Shown: piece by piece, positions 5,317-38,700 of the stretch
Layout of the letters: each line of letters opens with the position of its first letter
Position numbering within the stretch: position 1 is the stretch's first letter
Origin: Macrostomum lignano
Taxonomy: Eukaryota
Assembly: GCA_002269645.1 (NCBI GenBank)
Contig: NIVC01000807.1
Location: 1 to 64,000 of the forward strand
DNA length: 64,000 bases
Reading direction: 5' to 3'
Translations under genes and position numbers: made by a program
Notes under the pieces: generated by a model
Told to the model about the DNA's origin: nothing
Seen by the model: only the letters and a program-made list of their open reading frames with translations
Database searches by the model: none

Positions 5317-5317
5317 C

Positions 5318-5352
<35 letters not shown>

Positions 5353-5437: not shown

Positions 5438-5490
<53 letters not shown>

Positions 5491-5505
5491 ATTAGTTAGT
5501 TAGTT
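5088..5505. repeat. (TTAG)n tetranucleotide microsatellite with TCAG variants
   Basis: Direct reading. Confidence 0.95.
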
Positions 5506-9468: not shown

Positions 9469-10611
9469 TTATTCGCCGTGAAGCAATTTCGACTGTTGAC
9501 GGTTGGGACGAGAAATTGCCTGCAAGTGAAAGTGCGAAAGTGAACGAATTTGTGACACAAGCTGGGTTGACAGAACTGCTCGATAGCCATTTCAGTGACA
9601 TCAGCAGACATCAGAATCCAATAATCAGGCATGACCATATCCGGAAAATCCCAGAATCCCATAGACGGAATCCCATAGCCGGACATCCCAAAGCCGGACA
9701 CCCCAGAATGCCATATCTGCACATCCCAGAATCCCATAACAGGACATCCCATCATCTCATATCCGGACATCCCAGAATCCCATAGCCGGACATCCCAGAA
9801 TCCCATTGCTGGACATCCCAGAGTCCCATAGCCGGACATCCGAGAATCCCTTTTCTGGACATCCCAGAGTCCCATAGCCGGACATCCGAGAATCCCATAA
9901 CCGGACATCCCAGAGTCCCATATCCGGACATCCCATAATCCCATAGCCGGACATTCCAGAATCGCACACCCAGTTGCGCACCTGTCCAACCCTAGGCGGA
10001 GTGGAGGCCCTGGGCCGCAGCCTGTACTCGATGACCTGATCATAGAAGCGGTCCAGCTTGACGGCATTGGTGGTGCCAGCGCTCAGCGATCTGGTGTCCA
10101 CGCAGCTGAGCAGGATCTCCGGACAGCCAATCCGAGCGGCAGCTTCGCCACCGTTCGGCCGCTTGGCCAGCGCATCGGCTTTGCACAGGTCGCTCTTGGC
10201 GCCAATCACCAGCACTGGCGGAGTGTCAGCGCCAAGGCAGCTCTCGTGCAGCCAGCGACTGAGATTGAGCTCAGTCTTCCTGTTAGTGAGGTCGTGCACC
10301 AGCAGGATGCCGTGTACACCGTGGTAGAACACGCCGCGGCTGTTCTTGTGCATCGGATAGCCGCCGATGTCCCAGAACTCCAGGAAGAACAACCGCTCAG
10401 CCTGGCCGGTCAGCTCCGACCTGTACTCGTGCAGGCCGACCTGCAGTGAGCAGCCCACAGTCCAGGCTGGATTGGTCAGCTCGCTGTGATTGGTCAGCAG
10501 GTGTACAAGCGAGGACTTGCCAACGCCGGAGTCGCCAAGCACCAGAATTTTCACACGGAGCGTGTCTTCCTGTGCCGGCGGTTGTGGGGTTTTCGAAAAT
10601 TGATCAGACAT
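9469..10611 (-). CDS. RABL3: Rab-like protein 3; exons 10611 (or 10569 if SL-initiated)..9982 and 9519..9469
   Basis: RVKILVLGDSGVGKSSLVHLL, PAWTVGCS, FWDIGG, GILLVHDLTNRK, LVIGAKSD and AGTTNAVKLDRFYDQVIE match the RABL3 family. Donor CAG|GTGCGC at 9982/9981 and acceptor ACTTGCAG|GCA at 9520/9519 (phase 0) add AISRPNRQQSKLLHGE*, resembling the vertebrate ...KSLHYD end. Confidence 0.93.
9640..9960. repeat. About 23-bp tandem repeat (GGACATCCCAGAATCCCATAGCC) inside the RABL3 intron
   Basis: Direct reading; variant units alternate. Confidence 0.9.
10570..10576 (-). promoter_or_regulatory. Candidate trans-splice acceptor (GGCACAG|GAA) at the RABL3 N-terminus
   Basis: Phase-0 CAG. AUG plus EDTLRVK gives the same N-terminal length as human RABL3 (MASLDRVK, recalled). 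Confidence 0.5.
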
Positions 10612-20200: not shown

Positions 20201-23200
20201 TGGGCGATTCTCAAGGATGGTTTGGGCGATTCTCAAGGATGGTTTTGGGATTCTCAAGGATGGTTTGGGCGATTCTCAAGGATGGTTTGTGGCGATTCTC
20301 AAGGATGGTTTGTGGCGATTCTCAAGGATGGTTTGTGGCGATTCTCAAGGATGGTTTGTGGCGATTCTCAAGGATGGTTTGTGGCGATTCTCAAGGATGG
20401 TTTGTGGCGATTCTCAAGGATGGTTTGTGGCGATTCTCAAGGATGGTTTGTGGCGATTCTCAAGGATGGTTTGGGCGATTCTCAAGGATGGTTTGTGGCG
20501 ATTCTCAAGGATGGTTTGTGGCGATTCTCAAGGATGGTTTGGCGATTCTCAAGGATGGTTTGGGCGATTCTCAAGGATGGTTTGTGGCGATTCTCAAGGA
20601 TGGTTTTGGCGATTCTCAAGGATGGTTTGGGCGATTCTCAAGGATGGTTTGGGCGATTCTCAAGGATGGTTTGTGGCGATTCTCAAGGATGGTTTTGGCG
20701 ATTCTCAAGGATGGTTTGGGCGATTCTCAAGGATGGTTTGGGCGATTCTCAAGGATGGTTTGGGCGATTCTCAAGGATGGTTTGGGGCGATTCTCAAGGA
20801 TGGTTTGGGGATTCTCAAGGATGGTTTGGGGCGATTCTCAAGGATGGTTTGGGGCGATTCTCAAGGATGGTTTGGCGATTCTCAAGGATGGTTTGTGGCG
20901 ATTCTCAAGGATGGTTTGGGGCGATTCTCAAGGATGGTTTGGGCGATTCTCAAGGATGGTTTGTGGCGATTCTCAAGGATGGTTTGTGGCGATTCTCAAG
21001 GATGGTTTGTGGCGATTCTCAAGGATGGTTTGTGGCGATTCTCAAGGATGGTTTGGGGCGATTCTCAAGGATGGTTTGGGCGATTCTCAAGGATGGTTTT
21101 GGCGATTCTCAAGGATGGTTTGGGGCGATTCTCAAGGATGGTTTGTGGCGATTCTCAAGGATGGTTTGTGGCGATTCTCAAGGATGGTTTGGGCGATTCT
21201 CAAGGATGGTTTGGGCGATTCTCAAGGATGGTTTGTGGCGATTCTCAAGGATGGTTTGGGCGATTCTCAAGGATGGTTTGTGGCGATTCTCAAGGATGGT
21301 TTGTGGCGATTCTCAAGGATGGTTTGGGCGATTCTCAAGGATGGTTTGGGCGATTCTCAAGGATGGTTTGGGCGATTCTCAAGGATGGTTTGGGCGATTC
21401 TCAAGGATGGTTTGGGGCGATTCTCAAGGATGGTTTGGGGCGATTCTCAAGGATGGTTTGGGCGATTCTCAAGGATGGTTTGGGGCGATTCTCAAGGATG
21501 GTTTGTGGCGATTCTCAAGGATGGTTTGGGCGATTCTCAAGGATGGTTTGGGCGATTCTCAAGGATGGTTTGTGGCGATTCTCAAGGATGGTTTGTGGCG
21601 ATTCTCAAGGATGGTTTGGGCGATTCTCAAGGATGGTTTTGGCGATTCTCAAGGATGGTTTGTGGCGATTCTCAAGGATGGTTTGTGGCGATTCTCAAGG
21701 ATGGTTTGTGGCGATTCTCAAGGATGGTTTGTGGCGATTCTCAAGGATGGTTTGTGGCGATTCTCAAGGATGGTTTGTGGCGATTCTCAAGGATGGTTTG
21801 TGGCGATTCTCAAGGATGGTTTGTGGCGATTCTCAAGGATGGTTTGTGGCGATTCTCAAGGATGGTTTGTGGCGATTCTCAAGGATGGTTTGTGGCGATT
21901 CTCAAGGATGGTTTGTGGCGATTCTCAAGGATGGTTTTGGCGATTCTCAAGGATGGTTTGTGGCGATTCTCAAGGATGGTTTGTGGCGATTCTCAAGGAT
22001 GGTTTGGGCGATTCTCAAGGATGGTTTGGGGCGATTCTCAAGGATGGTTTGTGGCGATTCTCAAGGATGGTTTTTGGCGATTCTCAAGGATGGTTTGGGG
22101 CGATTCTCAAGGATGGTTTGGGGCGATTCTCAAGGATGGTTTGTGGCGATTCTCAAGGATGGTTTGGGCGATTCTCAAGGATGGTTTGGGGCGATTCTCA
22201 AGGATGGTTTGTGGCGATTCTCAAGGATGGTTTGGGGCGATTCTCAAGGATGGTTTGTGGCGATTCTCAAGGATGGTTTGGGGCGATTCTCAAGGATGGT
22301 TTGTGGCGATTCTCAAGGATGGTTTGGGCGATTCTCAAGGATGGTTTGGGCGATTCTCAAGGATGGTTTGTGGCGATTCTCAAGGATGGTTTGTGGCGAT
22401 TCTCAAGGATGGTTTGGCGATTCTCAAGGATGGTTTTGGCGATTCTCAAGGATGGTTTGTGGCGATTCTCAAGGATGGTTTGTGGCGATTTCAAGGATGG
22501 TTTGTGGCGATTTCAAGGATGGTTTGTGGCGATTCTCAAGGATGGTTTGTGGCGATTCTCAAGGATGGTTTGTGGCGATTCTCAAGGATGGTTTGTGGCG
22601 ATTCTCAAGGATGGTTTGTGGCGATTCTCAAGGATGGTTTTGGCGATTCTCAAGGATGGTTTGGGCGATTCTCAAGGATGGTTTGTGGCGATTCTCAAGG
22701 ATGGTTTGTGGCGATTCTCAAGGATGGTTTGGGGATTCTCAAGGATGGTTTGGGCGATTCTCAAGGATGGTTTGTGGCGATTCTCAAGGATGGTTTGGGG
22801 CGATTCTCAAGGATGGTTTGGGCGATTCTCAAGGATGGTTTGTGGCGATTCTCAAGGATGGTTTGGCGATTCTCAAGGATGGTTTGGGGCGATTCTCAAG
22901 GATGGTTTGGGGCGATTCTCAAGGATGGTTTGTGGCGATTCTCAAGGATGGTTTGGGGCGATTCTCAAGGATGGTTTGGGGCATTCTCAAGGATGGTTTG
23001 GGCGATTCTCAAGGATGGTTTGGGGCGATTCTCAAGGATGGTTTGGCGATTCTCAAGGATGGTTTGTGGCGATTCTCAAGGATGGTTTGGGGCGATTCTC
23101 AAGGATGGTTTGTGGCATTCTCAAGGATGGTTTGTGGCGATTCTCAAGGATGGTTTGTGGCGATTCTCAAGGATGGTTTGTGGCGATTCTCAAGGATGGT

Positions 23201-24145
23201 TTGTGGCGATTCTCAAGGATGGTTTGTGGCGATTCTCAAGGATGGTTTGGGCGATTCTCAAGGATGGTTTGGGCGATTCTCAAGGATGGTTTGGGGCGAT
23301 TCTCAAGGATGGTTTGTGGCGATTCTCAAGGATGGTTTGTGGCGATTCTCAAGGATGGTTTGGGCGATTCTCAAGGATGGTTTGTGGCGATTCTCAAGGA
23401 TGGTTTGTGGCGATTCTCAAGGATGGTTTGGGGCGATTCTCAAGGATGGTTTGGGGCGATTCTCAAGGATGGTTTGGGGCGATTCTCAAGGATGGTTTGG
23501 GGCGATTCTCAAGGATGGTTTGTGGCGATTCTCAAGGATGGTTTGTGGCGATTCTCAAGGATGGTTTGGGGCGATTCTCAAGGATGGTTTGTGGCGATTC
23601 TCAAGGATGGTTTGTGGCGATTCTCAAGGATGGTTTGGGGCGATTCTCAAGGATGGTTTGGGCGATTCTCAAGGATGGTTTGTGGCGATTCTCAAGGATG
23701 GTTTGGCGATTCTCAAGGATGGTTTGGGCGATTCTCAAGGATGGTTTGGGGCGATGCTCAAGGATGGTTTGTGGCGATTCTCAAGGATGGTTTGGGGCGA
23801 TTCTCAAGGATGGTTTGGGGCGATTCTCAAGGATGGTTTGTGGCGATTCTCAAGGATGGTTTGGCGATTCTCAAGGATGGTTTGGGGCGATTCTCAAGGA
23901 TGGTTTGGGGCGATTCTCAAGGATGGTTTGGGCGATTCTCAAGGATGGTTTGGGGCGATTCTCAAGGATGGTTTGGGGCATTCTCAAGGATGGTTTGGGG
24001 CGATTCTCAAGGATGGTTTGGGGCGATTCTCAAGGATGGTTTTTGGCGATTCTCAAGGATGGTTTGTGGCGATTCTCAAGGATGGTTTGTGGCGAATCTC
24101 AAGGGTGGTTTGTGGCGATTCTCAGGAGTTGCTAGGGCGATTCTC
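11240..24145. repeat. 12.9-kb satellite array, 23-bp unit AAGGATGGTTTGTGGCGATTCTC
   Basis: Period 23. Variants GTG/GGG/TTT before GCGATT; 21-22-bp deletion variants appear after ~14900. A 1196-bp (52-unit) internal duplication is visible. Confidence 0.98.
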
Positions 24146-24199
24146 AAGGGTGATTTAAGATTCTACAAAAGCACAAGGCAGCTTCTGAGCTTCAGTCAG

Positions 24200-25147
24200 T
24201 CACCGGACCGCTTGCATGCGGACCTGTTTAACCAGGGCGGCCATCAGAGTCGGCTCTTTAACAAAACGCGAGTCCTTATCAACGGCCAGCAGCCTGGGCC
24301 GCTTTTGATTCGGCTCAGCTGGCGGCGCCGCTATGAGCAGATGATCCGTGTACAGTGGCGCCATATCTATCCAGCGCAGGTTGGCCGGCGCCGCGGCGCG
24401 CATTTGGTTAATTGGAATTCGGCGCGCACCAGTCAGGCTGGTCACTAGCAGGTGGCCGCCGGGCTCCAGCACCAGACGCCGGGCCAGACGCAGCGGATGA
24501 GCAAATGCGTACATGCCAGATAGCAGGGCGGTGAGACTGAGCAGGGCGGCGATGAGCAGGTTGATGGGGCTGCCAAGGCTGCTGCTAGGCAGGCTGGAGG
24601 CCAGACTGGTTAGCCAGCTGGTGTCAGCGGCGTCATCAACAGAATCGCCATCGCCAGACTGCAATAAATCATCGTCGCTCATCAGGCGACGCTGCAGGGC
24701 GGCCTCCTCGTGTCCGGCAATCAGCCGACTATGCCGCAGGTGGTCGAACATCAGATAGGCGCTAAGCAGAGCGATTAAACCGGATAGGCAGTTGCGCTTG
24801 TAGAGCTGGTGAGGCGGAGCCTCGAATAGCAGCACCGCTTTGCTGGTCTGGGTGGAGCCGATTGAGGCGAACTCGGCCGTCTGGGTTGAGTACTCGCTCC
24901 ATGCTCCGCTCTGGCTATTCGGGTCTTGCTGCTTCTGCTGCTGCTGCTGCTGTTGCTGTCTTGGTTGATCTCGCAAGCGACGCGCAATCCGCCCAAGGTC
25001 GCTGCCGCCGCCTCCGCTGCTGCAGCGCCTGTAGCCTGGCTGTCCCAGTCTCAGTCGGTGCTGCTCAACCAATCGAAGGTATCGTTGAATAACAAGACGG
25101 CAGCAGCGATGCTGCAACTGCAGCACTGATGCGCTTGGCATGGGCAT
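24200..25147 (-). CDS. TMEM223: TMEM223-like mitochondrial membrane protein (TMEM70/186/223 clan), single exon, 315 aa
   Basis: Arg-rich, acid-poor N-terminus (presequence-like) and two hydrophobic helices. VLLFE, LRLARRLVLEPGG, IPINQM and LAVDKDSRF parallel human TMEM223 VLLFE, LRSVRSVVLRAGG, VPLKQV and LLDKTGHF (recalled). Confidence 0.72.
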   Translation of the reverse strand: MPMPSASVLQLQHRCCRLVIQRYLRLVEQHRLRLGQPGYRRCSSGGGGSDLGRIARRLRDQPRQQQQQQQQKQQDPNSQSGAWSEYSTQTAEFASIGSTQTSKAVLLFEAPPHQLYKRNCLSGLIALLSAYLMFDHLRHSRLIAGHEEAALQRRLMSDDDLLQSGDGDSVDDAADTSWLTSLASSLPSSSLGSPINLLIAALLSLTALLSGMYAFAHPLRLARRLVLEPGGHLLVTSLTGARRIPINQMRAAAPANLRWIDMAPLYTDHLLIAAPPAEPNQKRPRLLAVDKDSRFVKEPTLMAALVKQVRMQAVR

Positions 25148-25177: not shown

Positions 25178-26530
25178 TTTGGACTGGGGATCGGAGGACA
25201 TTGGGATGTCCATCGGTGGATTGCGGATTGAAGGACTTTGGGGATGTCTACCGGTGGATTGGGGACCGTAGGACATTGGGGATGTCCACCGGTGGATCGG
25301 GGATCGTAGGGCATTGGGATGTCCACCGGTGGATTGGGGATCGTAGGGCATTGGGGATGTCCACCGGTGGATTGGGGACCGTTGGGCATTGGGGATGTCC
25401 TCTGGTGGATTGGGGATCGTAGGGCATTGGGGATGTCCACTGGTGGATTGGGGATCGTAGGGCATTGGGGATTTCCACCGGTGGATTGCGGATTGAAGGA
25501 CTTTGGGGATGTCTACCGGTGGATTGGGGATTGAAGGACATTGGGGATGTCCACTGGTGGATTGGGGATCGTAGGGCATTGGGATGTCCACCGGTGGATT
25601 GGGGATCGTAGGGCATTGGGGATGTCCACTGGTGGATTGGGGATCGTAGGGCATTGGGGATGTCCACCGGTGGATTGGGGACCGTTGGGCATTGGGGATG
25701 TCCACCGGTGGATTGGGGATTGAAGAACATTGGGGATGTCCACCGGTGGATTGGGGATCGTAGGGCATTGGGGATATCCACTGGTGGATTGGGGATCGTA
25801 GGGCATTGGGGATATCCACCGGTGGATTGGGGACCGTAGGGCATTGGGGATGTCCACCGGTGGATTGGGGACCGTAGGGCATTGGGGATGTCCACCGGTG
25901 GATTGGGGACCGTTGGGCATTGGGGATGTCCACCGGTGGATTGGGGATTGAAGAACATTGGGGATGTCCACCGGTGGATTGGGGATCGTAGGGCATTGGG
26001 GATATCCACTGGTGGATTGGGGATCGTAGGGCATTGGGGATATCCACCGGTGGATTGGGGACCGTAGGGCATTGGGGATGTCCACCGGTGGATTGGGGAC
26101 CGTAGGGCATTGGGGATGTCCACCGGTGGACTGGGGACCGTAGGGCATTGGGGATGTCCACCGGTGGACTGGGGACCGTAGGGCATTGGGGATGTCCACC
26201 GGTGGATTGGGGATCGTAGGGCATTGGGATGTCCACCGGTGGATTGGGGATCGTAGGGCATTGGGGATATCCACTGGTGGATTGGGGATCGTAGGGCATT
26301 GGGGATATCCACCGGTGGATTGGGGACCGTAGGGCATTGGGGATGTCCACCGGTGGACTGGGGACCGTAGGGCATTGGGGATGTCCACCGGTGTATTGGG
26401 GCTTGAAGGACATTGGGGATGTCCACCGGTGGATTGGGGATTGAAGGACACTGAGGATGTCCACCGGTGGATTGGGGATTGAAGAACATTGGGGATGTCC
26501 ACCGGTGGGTTGGGGTTACAGGACATTGGG
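25178..26530. repeat. 38-bp G-rich tandem repeat (GGGGATGTCCACCGGTGGATTGGGGATCGTAGGGCATT), about 35 copies
   Basis: Period 38 (25981 to 26019); each unit contains the perfect palindrome TCCACCGGTGGA. Confidence 0.95.
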
Positions 26531-26964: not shown

Positions 26965-27105
26965 CCTACTAACTAAATAATTAACTGATTAATCAATTAG
27001 TTGACTAACTAACTGACTAACTAACTGACTGACTGACTAACTAACTAACAAACTAGCTAACTAACTAACTAACTGACTAACTAACTAACAAACTGAATAA
27101 CTAGC
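26965..27105. repeat. (TAAC/TGAC)n microsatellite downstream of the CHFR stop
   Basis: Direct reading; reverse complement of the (TTAG)n motif at 5088. Confidence 0.85.
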
Positions 27106-27147
27106 TCACTAAGGTCTCATCAAAGCACAGCAGGCTAATAGAATAAG

Positions 27148-30100
27148 CTAGTCAAACTTGGTCCGCCGGCAAGCGTGATTAAACCGTTTCGCATGCTCCG
27201 GCTTATTAAACTGAGTGCGGCACTCGCTGCCCCAGTGACAGTTGGGCCGGCTGGCCGCCTCGGCAGGCAGGGAGGCGGCGGGCAGGCCCGAGCGATAGGC
27301 CAGGGCCAGTTCTCGGAGGCAGGCCTGGCCGCAGGCGTAGCACACAGGGGTGTCCGGCCGGACTGGCCGGCTGCAGCGGTACTCGCCTGCGGCCAGGCGG
27401 GCGCAGCACTCTCGGAGCAGGTCGCGAACGCCCATATTGTTGGCGATGAGGTAGTCGGCGAGGATCTGCGACAATGGAATTGGGGATGATGTCATTTTTA
27501 GGGATGGATCCTTGAAGGAGCAATTCTCAGGATGGATGGGGTGATTCTCAGGATGGATGGAGTGATTCTTAGGGATGGATGGGGTGATTCTCAGGATGGA
27601 TGGAGTGATTTTCAGGATGGATGGGGTGATTCTCAGGATGGATGGAGTGATTCTTAGAGATGGATGGGGTGATTCTCAGGATGGATGGAGTGATTTTCAG
27701 GATGGATGGGGTGATTCTCAGGATGGATGGAGTGATTCTCAGGATGGATGGGGTGATTCTCAGGATGGATGGAGTGATTCTCAGGATGGATGGGGTGATT
27801 CTCAGGATGGATGGAGTGATTCTCAGGATGGATGGAGTGATTCTCAGGATGGATGGAGTGATTCTCAGGATGGATGGAGTGATTCTCAGGGATGGATGGG
27901 GTGATTCTCAGGATGGATGGAGTGATTCTCAGGATGGATGGAGTGATTCTCAGGATGGATGGAGTGATTCTCAGGATGGATGGAGTGATTCTCAGGATGG
28001 ATGGAGTGATTCTCAGGGATGGATGGGGTGATTCTCAGGATGGATGGAGTGATTCTCAGGATGGATGGAGTGATTCTCAGGATGGATGGAGTGATTCTCA
28101 GGATGGATGGAGTGATTCTCAGGATGGATGGAGTGATTCTCAGGGATGGTTTGGAGTGATTCTCAGGGATGGTTGGGCCCGGCTCTGAAAAGTGATTTAT
28201 GGCGAATCTGAAGGGTGATTTAGGGCCATTCGGAAAATCACCTTGGACTCAACCGGGTTGCCATTGACAACGTCCTCGAGCACGCGCCTGCCGAATGTGA
28301 AATCCTCGAATTCGGCCAGGCAGCCGAGGCAGCCGGGCCGGCGGCAGCCCCAGTAAGCGTGGCAGAAGAAGCGCTGGCACAGGGCGCACTGGAATCGGCG
28401 ATTCTCGGCCGGGCAGGACGGGTCGGCCCGGCGGTCTGGGAAGGCCTGCCAGCAGCACTGGCACAGCAGGTGGGCCTGGTTGTCCGGGCAGCTGGGGGTG
28501 TGAGGCGGATTTGAAAGTACTTTGAGCAATTCTTCATCCTTTAAAGTGCTTTTAAAGAGGTCAAGGCGATTCTCTAAGAGGCTGAGGGCGATTCTCTAAA
28601 AGGTTGACGGCGATTCTCTAGGAGGCTGAGTGTGATTCTCTAGGAGGCTGAGTGTGATTCTCTAGGAGGCTGAGTGTGATTCTCTAGGAGGCTGAGTGTG
28701 ATTCTCTAGGAGGCTGAGTGTGATTCTCTAGGAGGCTGAGTGTGATTCTCTAGGAGGCTGAGTGTGATTCTCTAGGAGGCTGAGTGTGATTCTCTAGGAG
28801 GCTGAGTGTGATTCTCTAGGAGGCTGAGTGTGATTCTCTAGGAGGCTGAGTGTGATTCTCTAGGAGGCTGAGTGTGATTCTCTAGGAGGCTTTGGGCGAT
28901 TTTAAGGGAGGCTGAGGGCGATTCTCTAGGAGGCTTTGGGCGATTCTCTAGGAGGCTTTGGGCGATTCTCTAGGAGGCTTTGGGCGATTCTCTAGGAGGC
29001 TGAGGGCGATTCTCTAGGATGCTGAGGGCGATTCTCTAGGATGCTGAGGGTTATTATCTGAGAGGTTGACGATGATTCTCTAGGAGGCTGAGGGCGATTC
29101 TAGGAGGCTGAGGGCGATTCTCTAAGAGGCTGAGGGCAATTCTCTAGAAGGCTGAGGGCGATTCTCTAGGAGGCTGAGGGCGATTCTCTAGGAGGCTGAG
29201 GGCGATTTTCTAGGATATTTAGGGCGATTCTCTAAGAGGTCATTAAACTGGCAGAGACTGACACGTGAGCAACTTGCAGCGGCTCCCATCGGAGATCGTC
29301 CAGATGGGGACAGCCGTCCACAGGCGGCGGGCCCGCGCCGGCAGCTCGCAACGGCGCCAGCGGCTGCTGCGGGTCGGGCGGCTGGTAGCCCGGGCACTGG
29401 CGGCAGACGTGCCGCAAATGCAGTGGGGTCGCCAACCGATGCAGCTGATAGGTCGGGTACGGCCCTGCGAACCCGAACAGCCGGTTCATTCCAAAGTAGG
29501 CGACTCCGGCATTGCCGTCGTCATCGCTGTCTTCATCTTCTTCGTCGGATTCGTCCTCATCAGCTGGAGACTGTCTGACCACCGGGAAGGCCTCCTGCCG
29601 GCCGATGTCGTTGAGACTGTCGAGCCTGAATGAGTTTTAAATTTATTGTTGTGTAGAAACAGACTGCTCTGAAACTGGATGTATCTACAATAGGGTCCGC
29701 TCTCTACCCATCAACTCACACAGGATCCTCTCTCTACCCATCTACTCACACAGGATCCGCCCCCTACCCATCTACTCACACAGGATCCGCCCTCTACCCA
29801 TCCACTCACACAGGATCCGCGCTCTACCCATCTACTCACACAGAATCCGCCCTCTACCCATCTACTCACACAGGATCCGCCCTCTACCCATCTACTCACA
29901 CAGGATCCGCCCTCTACCCATCTACTCACACAGGATCCGCCCTCTACCCATCTACTCACACAGGATCCGCCCTCTACCCATCCACTCACACAGGATCCGC
30001 GCTCTACCCATCTACTCACACAGGATCCGCCCTCTACCCATCTACTCACACAGGATCCGCCCTCTACCCATCCACTCACACAGGATCCGCGCTCTACCCA

Positions 30101-31708
30101 TCTACTCACACAGAATCCGCGCTCTACCCATCTACTCACACAGGATCCGCCCTCTACCCATCTACTCACACAGGATCCGCCCTCTACCCATCCACTCACA
30201 CAGGATCCGCGCTCTACCCATCTACTCACACAGAATCCGCCCTCTACCCATCTACCCGCAGAATCCGCTCTCTACCCATCCACTCACACAGGATCCGCGC
30301 TCTACCCATCTACTCACACAGAATCCGCCCTCTACCCATCTACCCGCAGAATCCGCTCTCTACCCATCTACTCACACAGAATCCGCGCTCTACCCATCTA
30401 CTCACACAGGATCCGCCCTCTACCCATCTACTCACACAGGATCCGCCCTCTACCCATCCACTCACACAGGATCCGCGCTCTACCCATCTACTCACACAGG
30501 ATCCGCCCTCTACCCATCTACTCACACAGAATCCGCCCTCTACCCATCTACCCGCAGAATCCGCTCTCTACCCATCAACTCACAAAATCCGCCCCCAGAC
30601 CGCAGCCCCCCCCCCGCCAACCGAAGCCAAACAGTATTCGCACTTCTCCAACTCCTCAGCTGGGCGCCGCCGTTCCGGATGCGCAGCCAGGTAAGCCTCG
30701 GCTAGATTAGTCACCAGCACGTTCTTGGTCACGCGTTCCGGACGTACGCGACACTGCGGACAGACCGGATTAGTCCGTTGCCACTGGCTGTAACAGCCGG
30801 CACAATAGCCGTGCAGACAGGGTATCAGGGTGACGCAGTCGTGAAATATTTCGCAACAAATTGTGCAGTTCAGATTGGCTTCCATTGGATCGCTGGAAGC
30901 GGAGGATGAAGCAGAGGCGGATGCGGATGCTGCGGCAGCATCGGCTGAAACTGTTGGCACTTTGCTGACTGTGCTGGGATCTGCTGCCAACATTGTTGCC
31001 GGTTGATCAGGTCCTGTAGATGCAATAGCACAAGGTGTCCAGATTACTTCTTGTTTTGTAGGTTTACTGGGCTTAGCATTTTTCGGTCAAAGATGGTACA
31101 ATGTTTTTTATAATGAAGTTACTACCTCTACTACTAAGTAAGTAACAAGTAGCATTATTTGGATTTATTATTGGGATTTATTCAGATATTAACTTACCCT
31201 TTTCGGTGGTGACCGCCGATTTATTAGCTTTATCTTTAGCTTCATCCGTTCGAGTTCGCTTAGTCGGCGGCTGATCGGTCGCCGGGTCCTCGCCGCTGTC
31301 GCCGTCAGTTATGGGCAGAGTCGTGTCGGGAATGACCATAGTTTGAGGCGGTTCCGCGCTGCCAGACTCGCTAGCTTCATCCGGCTGTTCGTGGCCGAGC
31401 AGTTTGAGGCGAAATGCCACCGTAGAGTTGCCGGGCAGCGGACAGACAGTGATGACGTCATCCTGTCGCAGCTCGGCCACGTCGCCAAGAATCCGACGGC
31501 CATTGACCAGAGTGCCGTTCATGCTGGTGTCCTGCAGCCAGACTCCGCCGTCGGGATCCTTGAACACGGCGCAGTGGTGCCCGGACACGAACTGGTTGCC
31601 GGCCAAGGACAAGTCGCAGTCGACGGCCCGACCGATTTGGCAGCGATCGGAGAGCAGCTCGAGTGCCAGGCCGCCGTCCGAAGTGTTGAATAGCTGAGCC
31701 CAGGCCTC
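27148..31708 (-). CDS. CHFR: E3 ubiquitin ligase CHFR; exons 31708..31198, 31013..30644, 29625..29263, 28491..28242, 27465..27148; no own start codon found
   Basis: FHA (QIGRAVDCDL...VSGHHC...LQDTSMNGT), RING (CTICCEIFHDCVTLIPCLHGYCAGC...CPQC), Cys-rich region (VCRQCP; CPDNQAHLLCQCC; CALCQRFFCHAYWGC) and C-terminal PBZ (CHWGSECRTQ...HAKRFNH). All four introns are GT-AG with compatible phases 1, 2, 2, 0; exon lengths 511+370+363+250+318=1812 nt. Confidence 0.95.
27520..28175. repeat. 21-22-bp tandem repeat (GGATGGATGGAGTGATTCTCA) in CHFR intron 4
   Basis: Direct reading; shares the GATTCTC..GGATGG core with the 11240-24145 array. Confidence 0.95.
28565..29235. repeat. 22-bp tandem repeat (TGTGATTCTCTAGGAGGCTGAG) in CHFR intron 3
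   Basis: Period 22 (28621 to 28643); GGCGATTCTC variants towards the right end. Confidence 0.95.
29695..30595. repeat. 30-bp tandem repeat (CTCTACCCATCTACTCACACAGGATCCGCC) in CHFR intron 2
   Basis: Period 30 read directly. Confidence 0.95.
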
Positions 31709-31760
31709 CTGTAGGTGGCGGCAAGGTGCTTGAACGACAATAAATAAATAAATATTCCTA
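31709..31760 (-). promoter_or_regulatory. Acceptor region (TATTTATTTATTTATTG...CTACAG|GAG) at the start of the CHFR first coding exon; candidate trans-splice site
   Basis: U-rich tract followed by a phase-0 CAG; no upstream in-frame ATG or convincing cis donor was found. Confidence 0.6.
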
Positions 31761-31769
31761 AAGCCAACC

Positions 31770-32295
31770 AAAATGTCTCTTAAGCCCCGAAAATGCCCAC
31801 TAGTTTACTAAATTGTCCTCGTAAGGCTTTAAAATGTCCCCAAAGCCGCTACAGTCTCTCAGGATCTAAAAATGTCCCTTGAGCCACTAAAATGTCTCTC
31901 AGGACCTAAAAATGTCCCTTAAGTGACTAAAACGTCTCTTAGGACCTAAAAATATCTCTCCAGCCACTGAAATGTCTTCCAGGACCTAAAAATGCCTTTC
32001 CAGCCACTAAAATGTCTCTCAGGACCTAAAAATGTCCCTTAAGTGACTAAAACGTCTCTTAGGACCTAAAAATATCTCTCCAGCCACTGAAATGTCTTCC
32101 AGGACCTAAAAATGCCTTTCCAGCCACTAAAATGTCTCTCAGGGCCTAAAACTGCTCTTTAGCCAATAAATTGTCCCTCAAGCCACCCAAATGTCTCTTG
32201 GGACCTAAAATATGTCCTATAAAGATACTAAAATGTCCCTCAAGCCACTACAGTATCTCTTGGGGCCTAAAATGTCCCTCAGTTACTAAAATGCC
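31770..32295. repeat. Diverged ~20-bp repeat (AAAATGTCTCTCAGGACCT/AGCCACT) with an exact 120-bp higher-order duplication
   Basis: 31891-32010 is repeated at 32011-32130. Confidence 0.85.
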
Positions 32296-32496
32296 TAATC
32301 AAGTTTCCAAAATGTTTCACACACACAAGCAACCCTAACTTCGCCCAGTGGCAACCAAAGTGTAAAATTAGAGAACAGCCCCGCTTGAACCCCAGCACAT
32401 GATGCCGACCGAACTCGGTTAGTGCATTGGATAAAAAAGTTTTAAAATTACTATTCTGTTTCGTAAGCAACAGTAAGCAGCCGCACTATGGGCAGA

Positions 32497-32506
32497 GTTT
32501 TATTTA
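32497..32506 (-). terminator. Polyadenylation signal AATAAA for TAF7
   Basis: Minus strand TGTAAATAAAAC in AT-rich sequence after the 3' array. Confidence 0.5.
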
Positions 32507-32801
32507 CAGAATAATTATACAGCCTCAGTGCAAACGCACTTATAATATAAAACTGTACGCACTTAACCAGACAGAAATGCACCAAAAAACAGGCCAAAAG
32601 CAGATTAGCTAGAACTGGAGAGCAAGAAAAATACGCCAATTAATGAATTGCTGCAGAAAAGTTGAAATTTCATCAATCAGAAAAGCCAGGCGGGTCCAGA
32701 CAGAACTTGCAGAAAAAGTAACGATATTTAGTAGCAATGCGAACAATTAATTTGGGGACTCTGTTTACCACAGGCTTTGTACACACTCTGCGAAATTGGG
32801 G

Positions 32802-33560
32802 TTCTTCCTCAGCGGGACTATGCAATCTGGATTCTTCCTCAGCGGGACTATGCAATCTGGATTCTTCCTCAGCGGGACTATGCAATCTGGATTCTTCCTC
32901 AGCGGGACTATGCAATCTGGATTCTTCCTCAGCGGGACTATGCAATCTGGATTCTTCCTCAGCGGGACTATGCAATCGGGATTCTTCCTCAGCGGGACTA
33001 TGCAATCTGGATTCTTCCTCAGCGGGACTATGCAATCTGGATTCTTCCTCAGCGGGACTATGCAATCTGGATTCTTCCTCAGCGGGACTATGCAATCTGG
33101 ATTCTTCCTCAGCGGGACTATGCAATCTGGATTCTTCCTCAGCGGGACTATGCAATCGGGATTCTTCCTCAGCGGGACTATGCAATCGGGATTCTTCCTC
33201 AGCGGGACTATGCAATCGGGATTCTTCCTCAGCGGGACTATGCAATCTGGATTCTTCCTCAGTGGGACTATGCAATCGGGATTCTTCCTCAGCGGGACTA
33301 TGCAATCGGGATTCTTCCTCAGCGGGACTATGCAATCTGGATTCTTCCTCAGCGGGACTATGCAATCGGGATTCTTCCTCAGCGGGACTATGCAATCGGG
33401 ATTCTTCCTCAGTGGGACTATGCAATCGGGATTCTTCCTCAGCGGGACTATGCAATCTGGATTCTTCCTCAGCGGGACTATGCAATCTGGATTCTTCCTC
33501 AGCGGGACTATGCAATCGGGATTCTTCCTCAGCGGGACTATGCAATCGGGATCAGTCCTC
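32802..33560. repeat. 30-bp tandem repeat, about 25 copies (minus strand GAGGAAGAATCCAGATTGCATAGTCCCGCT), starting at the TAF7 stop codon
   Basis: Period 30; the first unit overlaps the TAF7 stop codon. Confidence 0.95.
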
Positions 33561-34832
33561 TTCCATGTCAATGTCGTCGGCTTTGTCAGCTGCATCATCT
33601 GCACCGTCATCGCCTCCTTCGCCGTCGCCGTCACCAGCTTCGCCTTCGCCTTCTTCATCGTCGCTATTGTCGCCCTCGTTATCGCCGGAGGATGTCGAGT
33701 CGCTGATGTCGCCAAACAGCTGAGTGGCCATCATCAGATTGTTGCTGCCATCGTCCACAGTTTGCGATGAGCCGGCGGGCTGCTCCGAAGGCTGCGACTG
33801 CTGCTGTTGTGAAGACGCCGAGTCCAGTTTAGAGGCCTCCTCTTCAGTGAGCACCTTTGGCACAGGAATGTTTGTGTGCATGTACATAATCACATATATA
33901 GCGGTTATATCTGCCAAGTTCTATCTCAATTCAATTCTAATTCTAAGCGGTTATATCTGCCGAGTTCTATCTCAATTCAATTCTAATTCTAAGCGGTTAT
34001 ATCTGCCGAGTTCTATCTCAATTCAATTCTAATTCTAAGCGGTTATATCTGCCGAGTTCTATCTCAATTCAATTCTAATTCTAAGCGGTTATATCTGCCG
34101 AGTTCTATCTCAATTCAGTTCTAAGTATAAGCGGTTTTATCTGCCGAGTTCTATCTCAATTCAGTTCTAATTATAAGCGGCTATATCTACCGAGTTCTAT
34201 CTCAATTCAGTTCTAACTCTGCCACCAATCCCGCCGCCACTTTCTCACCTCCCACTTGACATCTGCCGCTTCCATATCGTTTTTCAGCAGCCGTTTGACC
34301 TCCTTCTCCAGCTCCGGCATGTCCATACTGCGATTGCGCAACACCCGACGGAACCGCCTGCGGCGAACATTTCTCAATGGCGGCGTCAGTCCGTGATCCC
34401 ACTGGTGCATCCGCTCCTCGGCCGTCGCCGTGACCGTCGCCGAAGCCGAAGCCGATCTGCGGCGGCGACTACCCGAGGATCGTTGAAGCGTCTGCAAAGC
34501 TGAGGCGGCATCCTCGCCGCACATCAGCATCTGGGTGATGTTGGCCACCTTGTAGAAGGTACGCGAGTCGGCAGTCTTCAGTCCCTCAACTATGCAGGGC
34601 AGGTCAACCAGCCGGCCGGGCAGGGTCTCGCCGTCGTAGGTTAGAGTGAAGCTGCGCAGATCCTGCCGGGCCTCCAGGCTTAGCCGGTCCTGCAGCTGGG
34701 CGCCCGACTCGATGTCCCCCTGAGCTTGTCAGCAGCTGGCTGGGGCAGGCGCAGTATGAGGCACTGCTCCGGCTCTACCGGGGCGTGACCACGAGCTTGA
34801 GCAGGCTGCGTCTGCTGCTGCTGCTGAGACAT
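33552..34832 (-). CDS. TAF7: TFIID subunit 7; exons 34832..34249 (one apparent -1 frameshift at the C5 run 34716-34720) and 33854..33552
   Basis: EQCLILRLP, RLVDLPCIVEGLKTADSRTFYKVANITQML, WDHGLTPPLRNVRRRRFR and ELEKEVKRLL match the TAFII55_N domain. Donor GAG|GTGAGA and acceptor CCAAAG|GTG are both phase 0. Acidic tail with LFGDISDS; stop TGA at 33554-33552. Confidence 0.92.
33898..34218. repeat. 46-bp tandem repeat, about 7 copies, filling the TAF7 intron
   Basis: GCGGTTATAT recurs at 33901, 33947 and 33993. Confidence 0.92.
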
Positions 34833-34853
34833 TGGACTCTTATTGTTGCTTTA

Positions 34854-34860
34854 CTGAAAA
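34854..34860 (-). promoter_or_regulatory. TTTTCAG acceptor 21 nt upstream of the TAF7 ATG (5'-UTR intron or trans-splice site)
   Basis: Minus strand GAATATTTTCAG|TAAAGCAACAATAAGAGTCCAATG. Confidence 0.5.
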
Positions 34861-34902
34861 TATTCGATTCAATTTTCTCTGGTTTATGATATCAGAGGCT
34901 CG

Positions 34903-35187
34903 CGCTGGCCCAGCAACTGAGGATCTGGGAGGCTGGCCCAGCAACTGAGGATCTGGGAGACTGGCCCAGCAACTGAGGATCTGGGAGACTGGCCCAGCAA
35001 CTGAGGATCTGGGAGGTTAGCCTAGCAACTGAGGATCTGGGAGACTGGCCCAGCAACTGAGGATCTGGGAGACTGGCCCAGCAACTGAGGATCTGGGAGG
35101 CTGGCCCAGCAACTGAGGATCTGGGAGGCTGGCCCAGCAACTGAGGATCTGGGAGGCTGGCCCAGCAACTGAGGATCTGGGAGGCTA
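34903..35187. repeat. 28-bp tandem repeat (CTGGCCCAGCAACTGAGGATCTGGGAGG), about 10 copies
   Basis: Period 28 read directly. Confidence 0.93.
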
Positions 35188-35739
35188 GCGGTCGAAATCT
35201 GAAGACATGGGAGGGCGACGGCTAAGCTTGAAGATTAGAAAATGCTGCATATTAACATCTGGAAGTCCTTACTACCAGACTTTGACAACCAGACTTTGAC
35301 CAAGAAGCAAAGGCCGCTCGAGTCCATTTTTAGCAGCAAAAAAATAACTGCAAAGCGTGTCCCCATGTCACCCGCAGAAAGCTGAGCGACGGAAGCAACT
35401 GACTCCATTCAAGTTGGCGAATTCCATTCAAGAATGAAAATCTACAAGCCAAGCCATTCCAGGACAAGACTGGCTGGCAGAGCTATAAATAAAAATCAGA
35501 AGAGAAAACCGCTGCAGGCGCACTGATGCATGTCAGAAATAGCCGGAAACTCGCCAAAGAAAAAGTTCTTAGAAAATTTCCAGGAAAAGCATGCCGAGAT
35601 GGCAAAGGAAGAAAGGATCAACTAACAAGAAAAAAGTTTTTCCTAAAAATAGACTCACTCACTTAAGTCACAAAGTTAAGCGGAAGGAAAGATTGAGAAA
35701 ATGTAGACGAGGATAGTTGGCATTCTACTTGCCCCAAGC

Positions 35740-38700
35740 AAACTAGAAACTTCCCACACAAACTAGAAACTTCCCACTCCAAACTAGAAACTTCCCACAC
35801 AAACTAGAAACTTCCCACTCCAAACTAGAAACTTCCCACACAAACTAGAAACTTCCCACTCCAAACTAGAAACTTCCCACACAAACTAGAAACTTCCCAC
35901 ACAAACTAGAAACTTCCCACACAAACTAGAAACTTCCCACACAAACTAGAAACTTCCCACACAAACTAGAAACTTTCCACACAAACTAGAAACTTCCCAC
36001 ACAAACTAGAAACTTCCACACAAACTAGAAACTTCCCACACAAACTAGAAACTTTCCACACAAACTAGAAACTTCCCACACAAACTAGAAACTTCCCACA
36101 CAAACTAGAAACTTCCGCACAAACTAGAAACTTCCCACACAAACTAGAAACTTCCCACACAAACTAGAAACTTCCCACACAAACTAGAAACTTCCTACTC
36201 AAACTAGAAACTTCCCACACAAACTAGAAACTTCCCACACAAACTAGAAACTTCCCACACAAACTAGAAACTTCCTAATCAAACTAGAAACTTCCCACAC
36301 AAACTAGAAACTTCCCACTCAAACTAGAAGCTTCCCACACAAACTAGAAACTTCCCACACAAACTAGAAACTTCCCACACAAACTAGAAACTTCCGCACG
36401 AACTAGAAACTTCCCACACAAACTAGAAACTTCCCACACAAACTAGAAACTTCCCACACAAACTAGAAACTTCCCACACAAACTAGAAACTTCCGCACGA
36501 ACTAGAAACTTCCCACACAAACTAGAAACTTCCCACACAAACTAGAAACTTCCCACACAAACTAGAAACTTCCCACACAAACTAGAAACTTCCCACACAA
36601 ACTAGAAACTTCCCACACAAACTAGAAACTTTCCACACAAACTAGAAACTTGCCACACAAACTGGAAACTTGCCACTTAAACTGTAAACTTTCCACACAA
36701 ACTAGAAACTTGCCACTCAAACTAGAAACTTGCGACTCAAACTAGAAACTTCCCACACAAACTGGAAACTTGCCACTCAAACTAGAAACTTCCCACACAA
36801 ACTAGAAGCTTCCCACACAAACTAGAAACTTTCCACACAAACTAGAAACTTTCCACACAAACTAGAAACTTCCTACTCAAACTAGAAACTTTCCACACAA
36901 ACTAGAAACTTCCTACTCAAACTAGAAACTTCCCACACAAACTAGAAACTTCCCACACAAACTAGAAACTTCCCACACAAACTAGAAACTTCCCACACAA
37001 ACTAGAAACTTTCCACACAAACTAGAAACTTCCGCACAAACTAGAAACTTCCCACACAAACTAGAAACTTCCCACACAAACTAGAAACTTCCTACTCAAA
37101 CTAGAAACTTCCCACACAAACTAGAAACTTCCACAAACTAGAAACTTCCACACAAACTAGAAACTTGCGACTCAAACTAGAAACTTCCCACACAAACTAG
37201 AAACTTCCCACTCAAACTAGAAACTTCCCACACAAACTAGAAACTTCCACACAAACTAGAAACTTCCACACAAACTAGAAACTTCCACTCAAACTAGAAA
37301 CTTCCACACAAACTAGAAACTTCCACACAAACTAGAAACTTCCACTCAAACTAGAAACTTCCCACACAAACTAGAAACTTCCCACACAAACTAGAAACTT
37401 CCACACAAACTAGAAACTTCCCACACAAACTAGAAACTTCCACACAAACTAGAAACTTCCACTCAAACTAGAAACTTCCCACACAAACTAGAAACTTCCA
37501 CACAAACTAGAAACTTCCCACACAAACTAGAAACTTCCCAATCAAACTAGAAACTTCCCACACAAACTAGAAACTTCCCACTCAAACTAGAAACTTCCCA
37601 CACAAACTAGAAACTTCCCACACAAACTAGAAACTTCCCACACAAACTAGAAACTTCCCACACAAACTAGAAACTTCCCACACAAACTAGAAACTTCCCA
37701 CACAAACTAGAAACTTCCGCACAAACTAGAAACTTCCCACACAAACTAGAAACTTCCCACACAAACTAGAAACTTCCCACACAAACTAGAAACTTCCGCA
37801 CAAACTAGAAACTTCCCACACAAACTAGAAACTTCCCACACAAACTAGAAACTTCCCACACAAACTAGAAACTTCCCACACAAACTAGAAACTTCCCACA
37901 CAAACTAGAAACTTCCACACAAACTAGAAACTTCCCACACAAACTAGAAACTTCCCACACAAACTAGAAACTTCCCACACAAACTAGAAACTTCCCACAC
38001 AAACTAGAAACTTCCCACACAAACTAGAAACTTCCCACACAAACTAGAAACTTCCCACACAAACTAGAAACTTCCCACACAAACTAGAAACTTCCCACAC
38101 AAACTAGAAACTTCCCACACAAACTAGAAACTTCCCACACAAACTAGAAACTTCCCACACAAACTAGAAACTTCCCACACAAACTAGAAACTTCCCACAC
38201 AAACTAGAAACTTCCCACACAAACTAGAAACTTCCCACACAAACTAGAAACTTCCCACACAAACTAGAAACTTCCCACACAAACTAGAAACTTCCCACAC
38301 AAACTAGAAACTTCCCACACAAACTAGAAACTTCCCACACAAACTAGAAACTTCCCACACAAACTAGAAACTTCCCACACAAACTAGAAACTTCCACACA
38401 AACTAGAAACTTCCACACAAACTAGAAACTTCCACACAAACTAGAAACTTCCACACAAACTAGAAACTTCCACACAAACTAGAAACTTCCCACACAAACT
38501 AGAAACTTCCCACACAAACTAGAAACTTCCCACACAAACTAGAAACTTCCACACAAACTAGAAACTTCCACACAAACTAGAAACTTCCACACAAACTAGA
38601 AACTTCCACACAAACTAGAAACTTCCACACAAACTAGAAACTTCCACACAAACTAGAAACTTCCCACACAAACTAGAAACTTCCCACACAAACTAGAAAC

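What the first reader, a model, noticed from the sequence alone, without database searches (positions are those of the whole stretch)
31560..32480. CHFR lacks its own start codon: initiator Met probably supplied by the spliced leader
Seen: the FHA exon opens at a phase-0 acceptor CTACAG|GAGGCCTGG (31709/31708). The first in-frame ATG lies inside the FHA domain (DTSMNG), and the track's start at 31771 is a TTG. Upstream to the TAF7 poly(A) signal I found only short closed ATG frames (MH*, MCWGSSGAVL*) and no good phase-0 donor. SL-AUG plus exon gives MEAWAQL..., aligning to the conserved W of human CHFR (QPWGRL, recalled), with G at +4. Established: flatworm SLs end in AUG usable for initiation. 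Inference: an obligately trans-splicing-dependent mitotic checkpoint gene.
Basis: partly seen in the sequence, partly recalled or inferred. Interest (0 to 1): 0.82.

Follow-up and report, generated by a model that had tools for sequence, protein, structure and literature searches.

The report
Flatworm CHFR gene without start codon
This Macrostomum lignano CHFR gene has no start codon of its own and most likely gets its first AUG from the spliced leader RNA, a mechanism already documented in flatworms, so this is a clean new example rather than a new phenomenon.

Summary
On the minus strand the FHA exon of a CHFR gene (FHA, RING, Cys-rich domain, PBZ) opens directly after CCACCTACAG| (AG 31710/31709, exon from 31708). 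An in-frame TAA lies at 31807-31805 with no ATG after it. The first in-frame ATG (31522-31520) lies inside the FHA domain. Only three ATGs occur in the 1.85 kb back to the TAF7 stop, and none has a usable donor.

The window is Macrostomum lignano and its exons are identical to GenBank contig NIVC01000807.1. All three GenBank CHFR models, built from RNA-seq, are marked partial and lack a Met. One starts exactly at this acceptor (EAWAQLF). A 4-nt indel between gene copies 31 nt upstream shows the upstream open frame is not coding.

The published 35-nt M. lignano spliced leader (SL) ends in ATG. Joined here it reads ATG|GAG GCC TGG, giving MEAWAQLF. This matches oyster MEGEAWGQLV and the first residues of the human CHFR FHA crystal construct.

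Use of the SL AUG as initiator is established in Schistosoma and Echinococcus. This is a new member of a known kind, of modest interest.

The parts
31709..31728 (-). Trans-splice acceptor: pyrimidine-rich tract plus CTACAG (AG at 31710/31709). It matches the [T/C]TNCAG motif.
   Evidence: Sequence. Motif from PMC8629364. The 20 nt before the exon are 20/20 identical between gene copies, while -100..-21 has 7 mismatches and a 4-nt indel.
31198..31708 (-). CHFR exon 1 (FHA domain). It starts GAGGCCTGG = EAW and ends AAG G|GTAAGT. The SL-AUG would precede base 31708.
   Evidence: Pfam FHA E = 2.9e-15. 100% identical to L003. GenBank PAA58109.1 starts EAWAQLF at the equivalent base.
31705..31707 (-). 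GAG codon that forms the second AG of the tandem acceptor CAG|GAG|. Use of it would give MAWAQLF, also in frame.
31805..31807 (-). In-frame TAA that closes the frame upstream of the acceptor. No ATG lies between it and the exon.
   Evidence: and the ORF table (the ORF starts at TTG 31771).
31520..31522 (-). First in-frame ATG of the gene, inside the FHA domain (DTSMNG). Starting here would delete about 60% of the domain.
31709..32480 (-). Presumed outron and intergenic spacer between the TAF7 poly(A) region and CHFR. It is largely a degenerate 40/120-nt tandem repeat (31854-32198). Its only ATGs are at 32427 (MH*) and 32400 (10 codons).
32499..32504 (-). The only AATAAA between the TAF7 stop and the CHFR acceptor (candidate TAF7 poly(A) signal).
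30644..31013 (-). CHFR exon 2 (RING finger). Acceptor CTACAG|GAC, donor GAA|GTGCGA.
   Evidence: Pfam zf-C3HC4. The junction was fixed by an exact match to PAA76631.1.
29263..29625 (-). CHFR exon 3 (acidic linker and start of the Cys-rich region).
28242..28491 (-). CHFR exon 4 (zf-CRD).
   Evidence: Pfam PF17979 E = 1.8e-20.
27148..27465 (-). CHFR exon 5 (end of zf-CRD, PBZ zinc finger, stop TAG 27150-27148).
   Evidence: Pfam PF17979 and PF10283.
33552..34832 (-). Upstream neighbour TAF7 on the same strand. It has its own ATG at 34832-34830 and its stop at about 33552.
   Evidence: Pfam TAFII55_N. GenBank TAF7 models.

Best explanation
The window carries one copy of the Macrostomum lignano CHFR gene (minus strand, five exons, 603 codons). 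The genomic coding sequence begins at the first base of exon 1 and has no initiator codon.

The pre-mRNA is SL trans-spliced at CCACCTACAG|GAGGCC (31709|31708). The 35-nt spliced leader ends in AUG, so the mature mRNA reads ...UUGCAUG|GAG GCC UGG... Translation then starts at the SL-borne AUG and gives MEAWAQLFNTSDGG..., a complete FHA-RING-CRD-PBZ checkpoint ligase.

Shown: gene identity, exon structure, absence of any cis AUG, the in-frame relation, non-coding behaviour of the upstream sequence, and transcript models that start at the acceptor without Met.

Inferred: that the SL is really attached at this site, and that ribosomes use its AUG. If so, un-trans-spliced RNA cannot make full-length CHFR.
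For: 1. Gene identity. FHA, RING, zf-CRD and PBZ are found in order on one strand. The best named relatives are M. lignano CHFR, then mollusc and cnidarian CHFR.

2. No cis start. An in-frame TAA lies 99 nt upstream with no ATG after it. Only three ATGs occur in the 1.85 kb back to the TAF7 stop. All have short closed frames and poor phase-0 donors.

3. Upstream sequence is not coding. Between the two gene-copy types, a 4-nt indel lies 31 nt upstream of the acceptor, and an out-of-frame ATG appears 23 nt upstream in L001/L002. The last 20 nt before the AG are 20/20 conserved. The first 69 exon nt differ only by two synonymous changes.

4. Transcript-based annotation. Mlig_3_7 gene models were built from RNA-seq, with boundaries cut at mapped SL-read peaks (PMC5730564). 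All three GenBank CHFR proteins are 'partial'. PAA58109.1 starts at the first base after CTACAG (L001 10001). The other two start 6 and 12 nt further in. None has an upstream exon. The window's spliced CDS equals PAA76631.1 plus four N-terminal residues.

5. The SL ends in ATG, and the acceptor matches the trans-acceptor motif [T/C]TNCAG.

6. The N-terminus fits. Oyster MEGEAWGQLV and mussel MDAEAWGQLV compare with worm M-EAWAQLF. The best PDB hit is the human CHFR FHA construct 1LGP, aligned from residue 2 of each sequence.

7. Precedent. SL-AUG initiation is documented in Schistosoma and Echinococcus.
Against: - No SL-CHFR junction read, 5' RACE product or N-terminal peptide could be examined here.
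- Two of the three GenBank models start a few nt inside the exon rather than at the AG. For those copies, SL evidence was probably not what set the boundary.
- The SL AUG has a U at -3, which is a weak context, although +4 is G.
- The TAF7 and CHFR models carry different name prefixes (Mlig026986 against Mlig022451). A shared precursor or operon is therefore not documented.
- A scan of metagenome contigs for the predicted junction found nothing, which is uninformative.
Confidence: 0.8

Rival explanations
1. A cis-spliced 5' exon carrying the ATG exists but was missed. It would lie in the repeat-rich spacer or upstream of or within TAF7, and would splice in phase 0 to the 31709 acceptor.
For: Real donors of this gene can be weak (GAA|GTGCGA scores -0.6 and CGT|GTCAGT scores -1.0), so a low donor score does not exclude use. 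In L001/L002 the repeat units contain ATG...CAG|GTCATG combinations scoring -0.4. An ab initio UniProt model (A0A1I8FKN3) joins a TAF7-region exon to this acceptor.
Against: The window/L003 copy has only three ATGs in 1.85 kb, and their best phase-0 donor scores -4.7. The L001/L002 candidates sit in repeat units that are absent from the window copy. None of the three RNA-seq-based GenBank models has an upstream exon. The fusion model is frameshift-ridden and reads TAF7 sequence in a wrong frame.
Confidence: 0.05
2. Translation starts at an internal AUG (Met63 of the exon, 31522-31520, or later). This would give an FHA-less CHFR, and the sequence upstream of it would be 5' UTR.
For: It is the first genomic in-frame ATG. 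Leaky scanning past a weak SL AUG (U at -3) is conceivable.
Against: The 62 codons before it encode the conserved N-terminal half of the FHA domain, including the GR and SGHH motifs. They align residue for residue with mollusc, cnidarian and human CHFR from the EAW motif onward. Changes between copies in this part are synonymous.
Confidence: 0.05
3. Non-AUG initiation (for example the TTG at 31771) occurs on an unspliced leader that reads through the acceptor.
For: The frame is open for 33 codons upstream in the window copy and contains a TTG.
Against: In the other gene-copy type, the frame is broken by a 4-nt indel and closed by a TAA 15 codons upstream. There is no orthologue support for an N-terminal extension of that sequence. 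Transcript models start at the acceptor.
Confidence: 0.03
4. The SL is joined mainly at the second AG of the tandem site (GAG|GCC, exon from 31705), giving MAWAQLF. This is a variant of the main model, not a contradiction of it.
For: CAGGAG is a NAGNAG acceptor and both joins are in frame.
Against: CAG is the enriched trans-acceptor (PMC8629364). The GenBank model PAA58109.1 includes the Glu codon. Orthologues have E-A-W.
Confidence: 0.07

Closest known systems
Flatworm mRNAs that use the SL 3'-terminal AUG as initiator methionine (Cheng, Cohen, Ndegwa and Davis 2006, J Biol Chem 281:733; Schistosoma)
   Same: The SL ends in AUG. The acceptor lies in frame directly before the conserved N-terminus. 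There is no other usable AUG. According to PMC9851317, the SL AUG is in frame in 28% of S. mansoni trans-spliced transcripts, and more than 40 cDNAs need it.
   Different: The species is different (a free-living macrostomorph). The gene (CHFR) is not reported in that context in the papers I could search (no paper holds both Macrostomum and CHFR). Use of the AUG is inferred here, not tested experimentally.
Echinococcus granulosus SL-bearing cDNAs that need the SL AUG for an orthologue-length N-terminus (PMC3510090)
   Same: The argument is the same: the N-terminus corresponds to conserved orthologues only if the SL AUG is the start.
   Different: Those cases rest on sequenced SL-bearing cDNAs. 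Here the SL junction is inferred from genomic sequence plus annotation.
[quoted passage not shown]
   Same: The acceptor motif is YTNCAG. The gene is conserved. A same-strand upstream neighbour lies less than 1 kb away (about 770 nt from AATAAA to the acceptor, 345 nt of it tandem repeat).
   Different: Those papers, as far as I read them, do not analyse SL-AUG-dependent starts. A shared TAF7-CHFR precursor is not documented.
CHFR (checkpoint with forkhead-associated and RING domains) E3 ubiquitin ligase
   Same: The full domain order FHA-RING-Cys-rich-PBZ is present. The best PDB hit is the human CHFR FHA domain (1LGP).
   Different: The N-terminal tail before the FHA domain is only one residue plus Met, against 14 residues in human and 4-6 in bivalves.

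Membership tests
SL-AUG-initiated flatworm mRNA | The organism's spliced leader ends in AUG at its 3' end. | not testable with these tools
   No SL RNA gene is in the window. Taken from the literature: the M. lignano SL is CGGTCTCTTACTGCGAAGACTCAATTTATTGCATG, followed by GTAAG in the SL RNA gene (PMC8629364; PMC10468722). The species was identified.
SL-AUG-initiated flatworm mRNA | The mRNA is SL trans-spliced at the acceptor in question. | tested here: inconclusive
   The evidence is indirect. The GenBank RNA-seq-based model starts at the first base after CTACAG. The motif YTNCAG is matched. There is no upstream donor or exon. No junction read was seen, and the metagenome scan found nothing.
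SL-AUG-initiated flatworm mRNA | The SL AUG is in frame with the main ORF. | tested here: met
   ATG|GAG GCC TGG continues for 603 codons through five exons.
SL-AUG-initiated flatworm mRNA | No alternative AUG could give the conserved N-terminus. | tested here: met
   An in-frame stop lies at 31807-31805. The first ATG is at codon 63, inside the FHA domain.
SL-AUG-initiated flatworm mRNA | The N-terminus corresponds to orthologues only with the SL Met. | tested here: met
   Alignment with 12 mollusc and cnidarian CHFRs, and with PDB 1LGP.
SL-AUG-initiated flatworm mRNA | Initiation at the SL AUG is demonstrated (peptide, reporter or ribosome profiling). | not testable with these tools
   This needs wet-lab or raw read data.
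CHFR E3 ubiquitin ligase | N-terminal FHA domain. | tested here: met
   PF00498 E = 2.9e-15; 1LGP E = 4.6e-10.
CHFR E3 ubiquitin ligase | Central RING finger. | tested here: met
   PF00097 and PF13639.
CHFR E3 ubiquitin ligase | C-terminal cysteine-rich domain with PBZ zinc finger. | tested here: met
   PF17979 E = 1.8e-20, and PF10283 at 22.4 bits, just under its 22.7 cut-off.
M. lignano operon (criteria of Ustyantsev and Berezikov 2021) | Adjacent same-strand genes, the second one SL trans-spliced, with a repeat-adjusted distance under 1 kb. | tested here: inconclusive
   The orientation is the same. About 770 nt lie between AATAAA (32504-32499) and the acceptor, and 345 nt of that is tandem repeat. 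However, the TAF7 3' end and the SL attachment are not directly observed. In the other gene copies the spacer is 5.7-7.4 kb, mostly repeats.
M. lignano operon (criteria of Ustyantsev and Berezikov 2021) | A polycistronic precursor spans both genes. | not testable with these tools
   The GenBank names differ in prefix (Mlig026986g7 for TAF7 against Mlig022451g4 for CHFR on the same contig), which gives no support.

The most novel reading that the evidence does not exclude
CHFR lost its native start codon after an in-frame trans-splice acceptor arose a few codons into the gene. In Macrostomum, checkpoint-ligase output would then be gated entirely by SL trans-splicing. This could be a regulatory lever in neoblasts, where 85% of specific genes are reported as trans-spliced. 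CHFR would also be one of a sizeable, unrecognised class of ATG-less M. lignano genes currently deposited as 'partial'. The Ras-like gene in the same cluster (acceptor at 10570|10569, with its native ATG still present 42 nt upstream in the outron) would represent the intermediate stage.
Probability: 0.2. Interest if true: 0.5.

Novelty: new member of a known kind. Interest (0 to 1): 0.3.

Why it matters
The practical value is for annotation. The three GenBank CHFR entries of M. lignano, and probably many other 'partial' proteins of this genome, are likely complete once the SL-borne Met is added. Gene finders that insist on a genomic ATG will truncate such genes or fuse them to neighbours. UniProt A0A1I8FKN3, which fuses TAF7 to CHFR, is an example.

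For biology, this is a clear case in a transgenesis-capable flatworm where the SL-AUG hypothesis could be tested directly with reporters. It does not reveal a new mechanism.

Tried and rejected
- A protein search with exon 1 alone found nothing. This was a word-index limitation, because the full-length query then found the M. lignano copies.
- My first gene model used a stronger-looking GTGAGT donor at 30583 and a different exon 3/4 junction. I replaced both after an exact match to PAA76631.1.
- I first read 'g4' in Mlig022451g4 as 'fourth gene of a transcriptional unit' and hence as operon evidence. I rejected this when the TAF7 copies on two different contigs turned out to be Mlig026986g7 and g9.
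- Synonymous against non-synonymous counts between copies (4 against 6-7 differing codons in about 590) are too few to say anything about selection.
- Supplement searches for CHFR or the Mlig identifiers in PMC5816591, PMC5730564 and PMC5173321 found nothing.
- Cheng et al. 2006 and Wasik et al. 2015 are not held in the library.
- Searching the window for the SL sequence gave only a chance-level match.
- An Rfam scan of 27000-36000 found nothing significant.
- A metagenome scan for the predicted junction gave 0 hits, which is uninformative.
Full report
**What is in the sequence**

The feature lies on the minus strand. The text ...ttgtcgttcaagcaccttgccgccacctacag|gaggcctgggctcagctattcaac... places an AG at 31710/31709 and the first exon base at 31708.

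From 31708 the frame GAG GCC TGG reads EAWAQLFNTSDGG... It contains an FHA domain (Pfam PF00498, E = 2.9e-15, residues 24-88). Upstream the same frame is open only to a TAA at 31807-31805 and has no ATG. The mechanical ORF table starts it at a TTG at 31771. The first in-frame ATG is at 31522-31520, at codon 63, inside the FHA match.

**The gene**

Downstream ORFs on the same strand carry a RING finger, the CHFR-type cysteine-rich domain (PF17979, E = 1.8e-20) and a PBZ finger. With canonical GT-AG junctions they join into a five-exon CDS:

| Exon | Window coordinates |
|---|---|
| 1 | 31708-31198 |
| 2 | 31013-30644 |
| 3 | 29625-29263 |
| 4 | 28491-28242 |
| 5 | 27465-27148 |

The CDS is 1812 nt, or 603 codons. 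Codons 5-603 equal GenBank PAA76631.1 exactly. The introns are filled with tandem arrays. The upstream same-strand neighbour is TAF7 (TAFII55_N).

**No start codon in cis**

Between the TAF7 stop (about 33552) and the acceptor there are only three minus-strand ATGs in 1.85 kb:

- 32673, with a 22-codon frame. It lies upstream of the only AATAAA, at 32504-32499.
- 32427 (MH*).
- 32400 (MCWGSSGAVL*).

The only phase-0 GT sites within those frames score -4.7 and -9.7 on a simple donor matrix. On the same matrix this gene's own donors score between -1.0 and 6.3. Of the AG sites in the 120 nt before the exon, only 31708 is both in frame and matches the published trans-acceptor motif. The site is a tandem CAG|GAG| acceptor, and the second AG is also in frame.

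**Organism and independent copies**

A full-length protein query identifies the organism as Macrostomum lignano. The Mlig_3_7 assembly (GCA_002269645.1) holds three CHFR copies, and I fetched all three as loci L001-L003.

The window's exons are 100% identical to L003 (NIVC01000807.1). The TAF7-CHFR spacer is 1861 nt in both. L001 and L002 represent a second copy type that is about 99% identical in the exons.

An alignment of the 5' region (A1) shows three zones:

- The 20 nt before the AG are identical in all copies.
- Positions -100 to -21 have 7 mismatches and a 4-nt indel.
- The first 69 exon nt differ by two synonymous changes.

The indel breaks the upstream frame. In L001/L002 a substitution also creates an out-of-frame ATG 23 nt before the exon, and a TAA closes the frame 15 codons upstream. 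The open frame upstream of the acceptor is therefore not coding. Coding constraint starts at the acceptor.

**Transcript-based annotation**

Wudarski et al. 2017 built the gene models from RNA-seq. They cut transcript boundaries at peaks of mapped reads that had carried the SL (the TBONE pipeline; PMC5730564). All three GenBank CHFR proteins are flagged 'partial' and none begins with Met.

| Protein | Locus tag | First residues | Start relative to acceptor |
|---|---|---|---|
| PAA58109.1 | Mlig022451g4 | EAWAQLF | First base after CTACAG (L001 10001) |
| PAA53966.1 | Mlig018430g1 | WAQLF | 6 nt further in |
| PAA76631.1 | Mlig002761g1 | QLFNTS | 12 nt further in |

A 5'-partial ORF call requires that the transcript model itself starts there, because a stop lies just upstream in the genome. 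No model has an upstream exon. Three UniProt models from the older ML2 assembly also begin EAWAQLF. A fourth (A0A1I8FKN3) is a frameshifted TAF7-CHFR fusion joined at the same acceptor. I regard that one as a prediction artefact.

**The spliced leader**

The M. lignano SL is a single 35-nt sequence ending ...TTGCATG, followed in the SL RNA gene by GTAAG. Thirty percent of genes are reported as trans-spliced, and the top acceptor motif is [T/C]TNCAG (PMC8629364). Wiberg et al. [quoted passage not shown]

Joined at 31708, the mRNA would read ...UUGCAUG|GAG GCC UGG, giving MEAWAQLF. The +4 position is G and the -3 position is U.

**Does the N-terminus make sense?**

Bivalve and cnidarian CHFRs start only a few residues before the same motif: oyster MEGEAWGQLV, mussel MDAEAWGQLV. 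The best PDB match is the human CHFR FHA crystal construct 1LGP (E = 4.6e-10), aligned from residue 2 of the query to residue 2 of the chain. Only a methionine is missing, and the SL supplies exactly that.

**Most likely mechanism**

Trans-splicing at 31709|31708 removes an outron that is repeat-rich and, in some copies, contains an out-of-frame AUG. It also donates the initiator AUG. Un-trans-spliced RNA cannot give full-length CHFR. I put this at about 0.8. The attachment of the SL and the use of its AUG are inferred, not observed.

The rivals are each at or below about 0.07:

- An undetected cis exon.
- Initiation at the internal Met63, giving an FHA-less protein.
- Non-AUG initiation in an unspliced leader.
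- Predominant use of the second AG of the tandem site, which is a variant of the main model.

Whether TAF7 and CHFR form an operon is undecided. The spacing in this copy fits the published criterion. The spacer is 5.7-7.4 kb in the other copies (mostly repeats), and the annotation does not link the two genes.

**Comparison with what is known**

Use of the flatworm SL 3'-terminal AUG as initiator methionine was established by Cheng et al. 2006. [quoted passage not shown]

E. granulosus cDNAs were argued in the same way from orthologue N-termini (PMC3510090). All reported parasitic flatworm SLs end in ATG (PMC12582326). The Hymenolepis genome paper calls it 'the necessary start codon' (PMC7653826).

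I found no paper that mentions CHFR together with Macrostomum. The M. lignano trans-splicing papers I read do not analyse SL-AUG-dependent genes. The finding is thus a well-supported new instance of a known mechanism. Its main use is for correcting annotation and as a test case in a transgenic flatworm.

**Context within the same gene cluster**

Three same-strand genes of the cluster have annotated 5' ends that abut an AG.

- **TAF7.** The model starts at AAGAG|TCCAATG. The SL AUG would be out of frame, and the gene's own ATG lies 4 nt downstream.
- **CHFR.** The SL AUG is in frame and is the only available start.
- **A Ras/Roc-like GTPase.** The model starts right after GGCACAG|GAAGAC (EDTLRVKILV; window exon start 10569). 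The SL AUG would be in frame, yet a native in-frame ATG still lies 42 nt upstream at 10611-10609.

This looks like a series from a redundant to an indispensable SL AUG. I did not follow it further.

Noticed in passing
window 10569-10611, minus strand (L001 19608; L002 18291): The GenBank model of a Ras/Roc-like small GTPase starts EDTLRVKILV right after GGCACAG|GAAGAC, so the SL AUG would be in frame (MEDTLRVKILVLGD). Unlike CHFR, a native in-frame ATG survives 42 nt upstream (MSDQFSKTPQPPAQ|EDTL...), in what would be the outron. This may be an intermediate stage of start-codon replacement, or alternative N-termini.
   Followed up: partly
window 34830-34838, minus strand (L001 2569-2577): The TAF7 GenBank model (PAA..., Mlig026986g7) starts PMSQQQ, so the transcript starts at AAGAG|TCCAATG. 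If that is a trans-splice site, the SL AUG is out of frame (AUGUCCAAUG) and opens a 37-codon overlapping frame. The real AUG lies 4 nt downstream.
   Followed up: partly
window 11249-24156 and 35739-59802: There are two very large tandem arrays: a 23-bp unit with about 567 copies (12.9 kb) and a 20-bp unit with about 1220 copies (24 kb). Together they make up more than half of the window. The 20-bp unit also begins locus L001, upstream of TAF7.
   Followed up: no
window 32802-33552, minus strand: A 30-bp tandem array of 25 copies starts right at the TAF7 stop codon and fills the presumed 3' UTR. It is open in several frames (for example (HSPAEEESRL)n). In L001 the same array has about 130 copies (4296-8186), so its copy number differs greatly between gene copies.
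   Followed up: partly
window 27523-28176, 28565-29239, 29692-30584: CHFR introns 2, 3 and 4 each consist largely of their own tandem array (30-bp, 22-bp and 21-bp units, about 30 copies each). Copy numbers differ in L001.
   Followed up: no
window 30583-30644, minus strand: The annotated exon 2 donor is a weak GAA|GTGCGA (30643). A consensus GTGAGT donor lies 60 nt further on (30583), with the reading frame kept. Using it would insert 20 residues (CEYCLASVGGGGAAVWGRIL). This could be an alternative 5' splice site.
   Followed up: partly
L002 13619-13935 (NIVC01002993.1): The Mlig018430g1 copy has a 1-nt gap in the last exon relative to the window. Its protein (PAA53966.1) therefore ends in a frameshifted tail and lacks the PBZ finger. 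It is either a decaying copy or an assembly error.
   Followed up: no
L001 10462-10527: The L001/L002 copy type carries an in-frame insertion encoding AEAEDEDEDEAKDE in the acidic linker of exon 1. A short GAAGAT-type repeat there has expanded relative to the window copy.
   Followed up: no
window 24200-25147, minus strand: A single-exon 315-aa ORF with its own ATG (MPMPSASVLQ...) and no Pfam domain lies between CHFR and the Ras-like gene on the same strand. It is annotated in all three GenBank loci. A 38-bp tandem array (25180-26515) separates it from CHFR.
   Followed up: no
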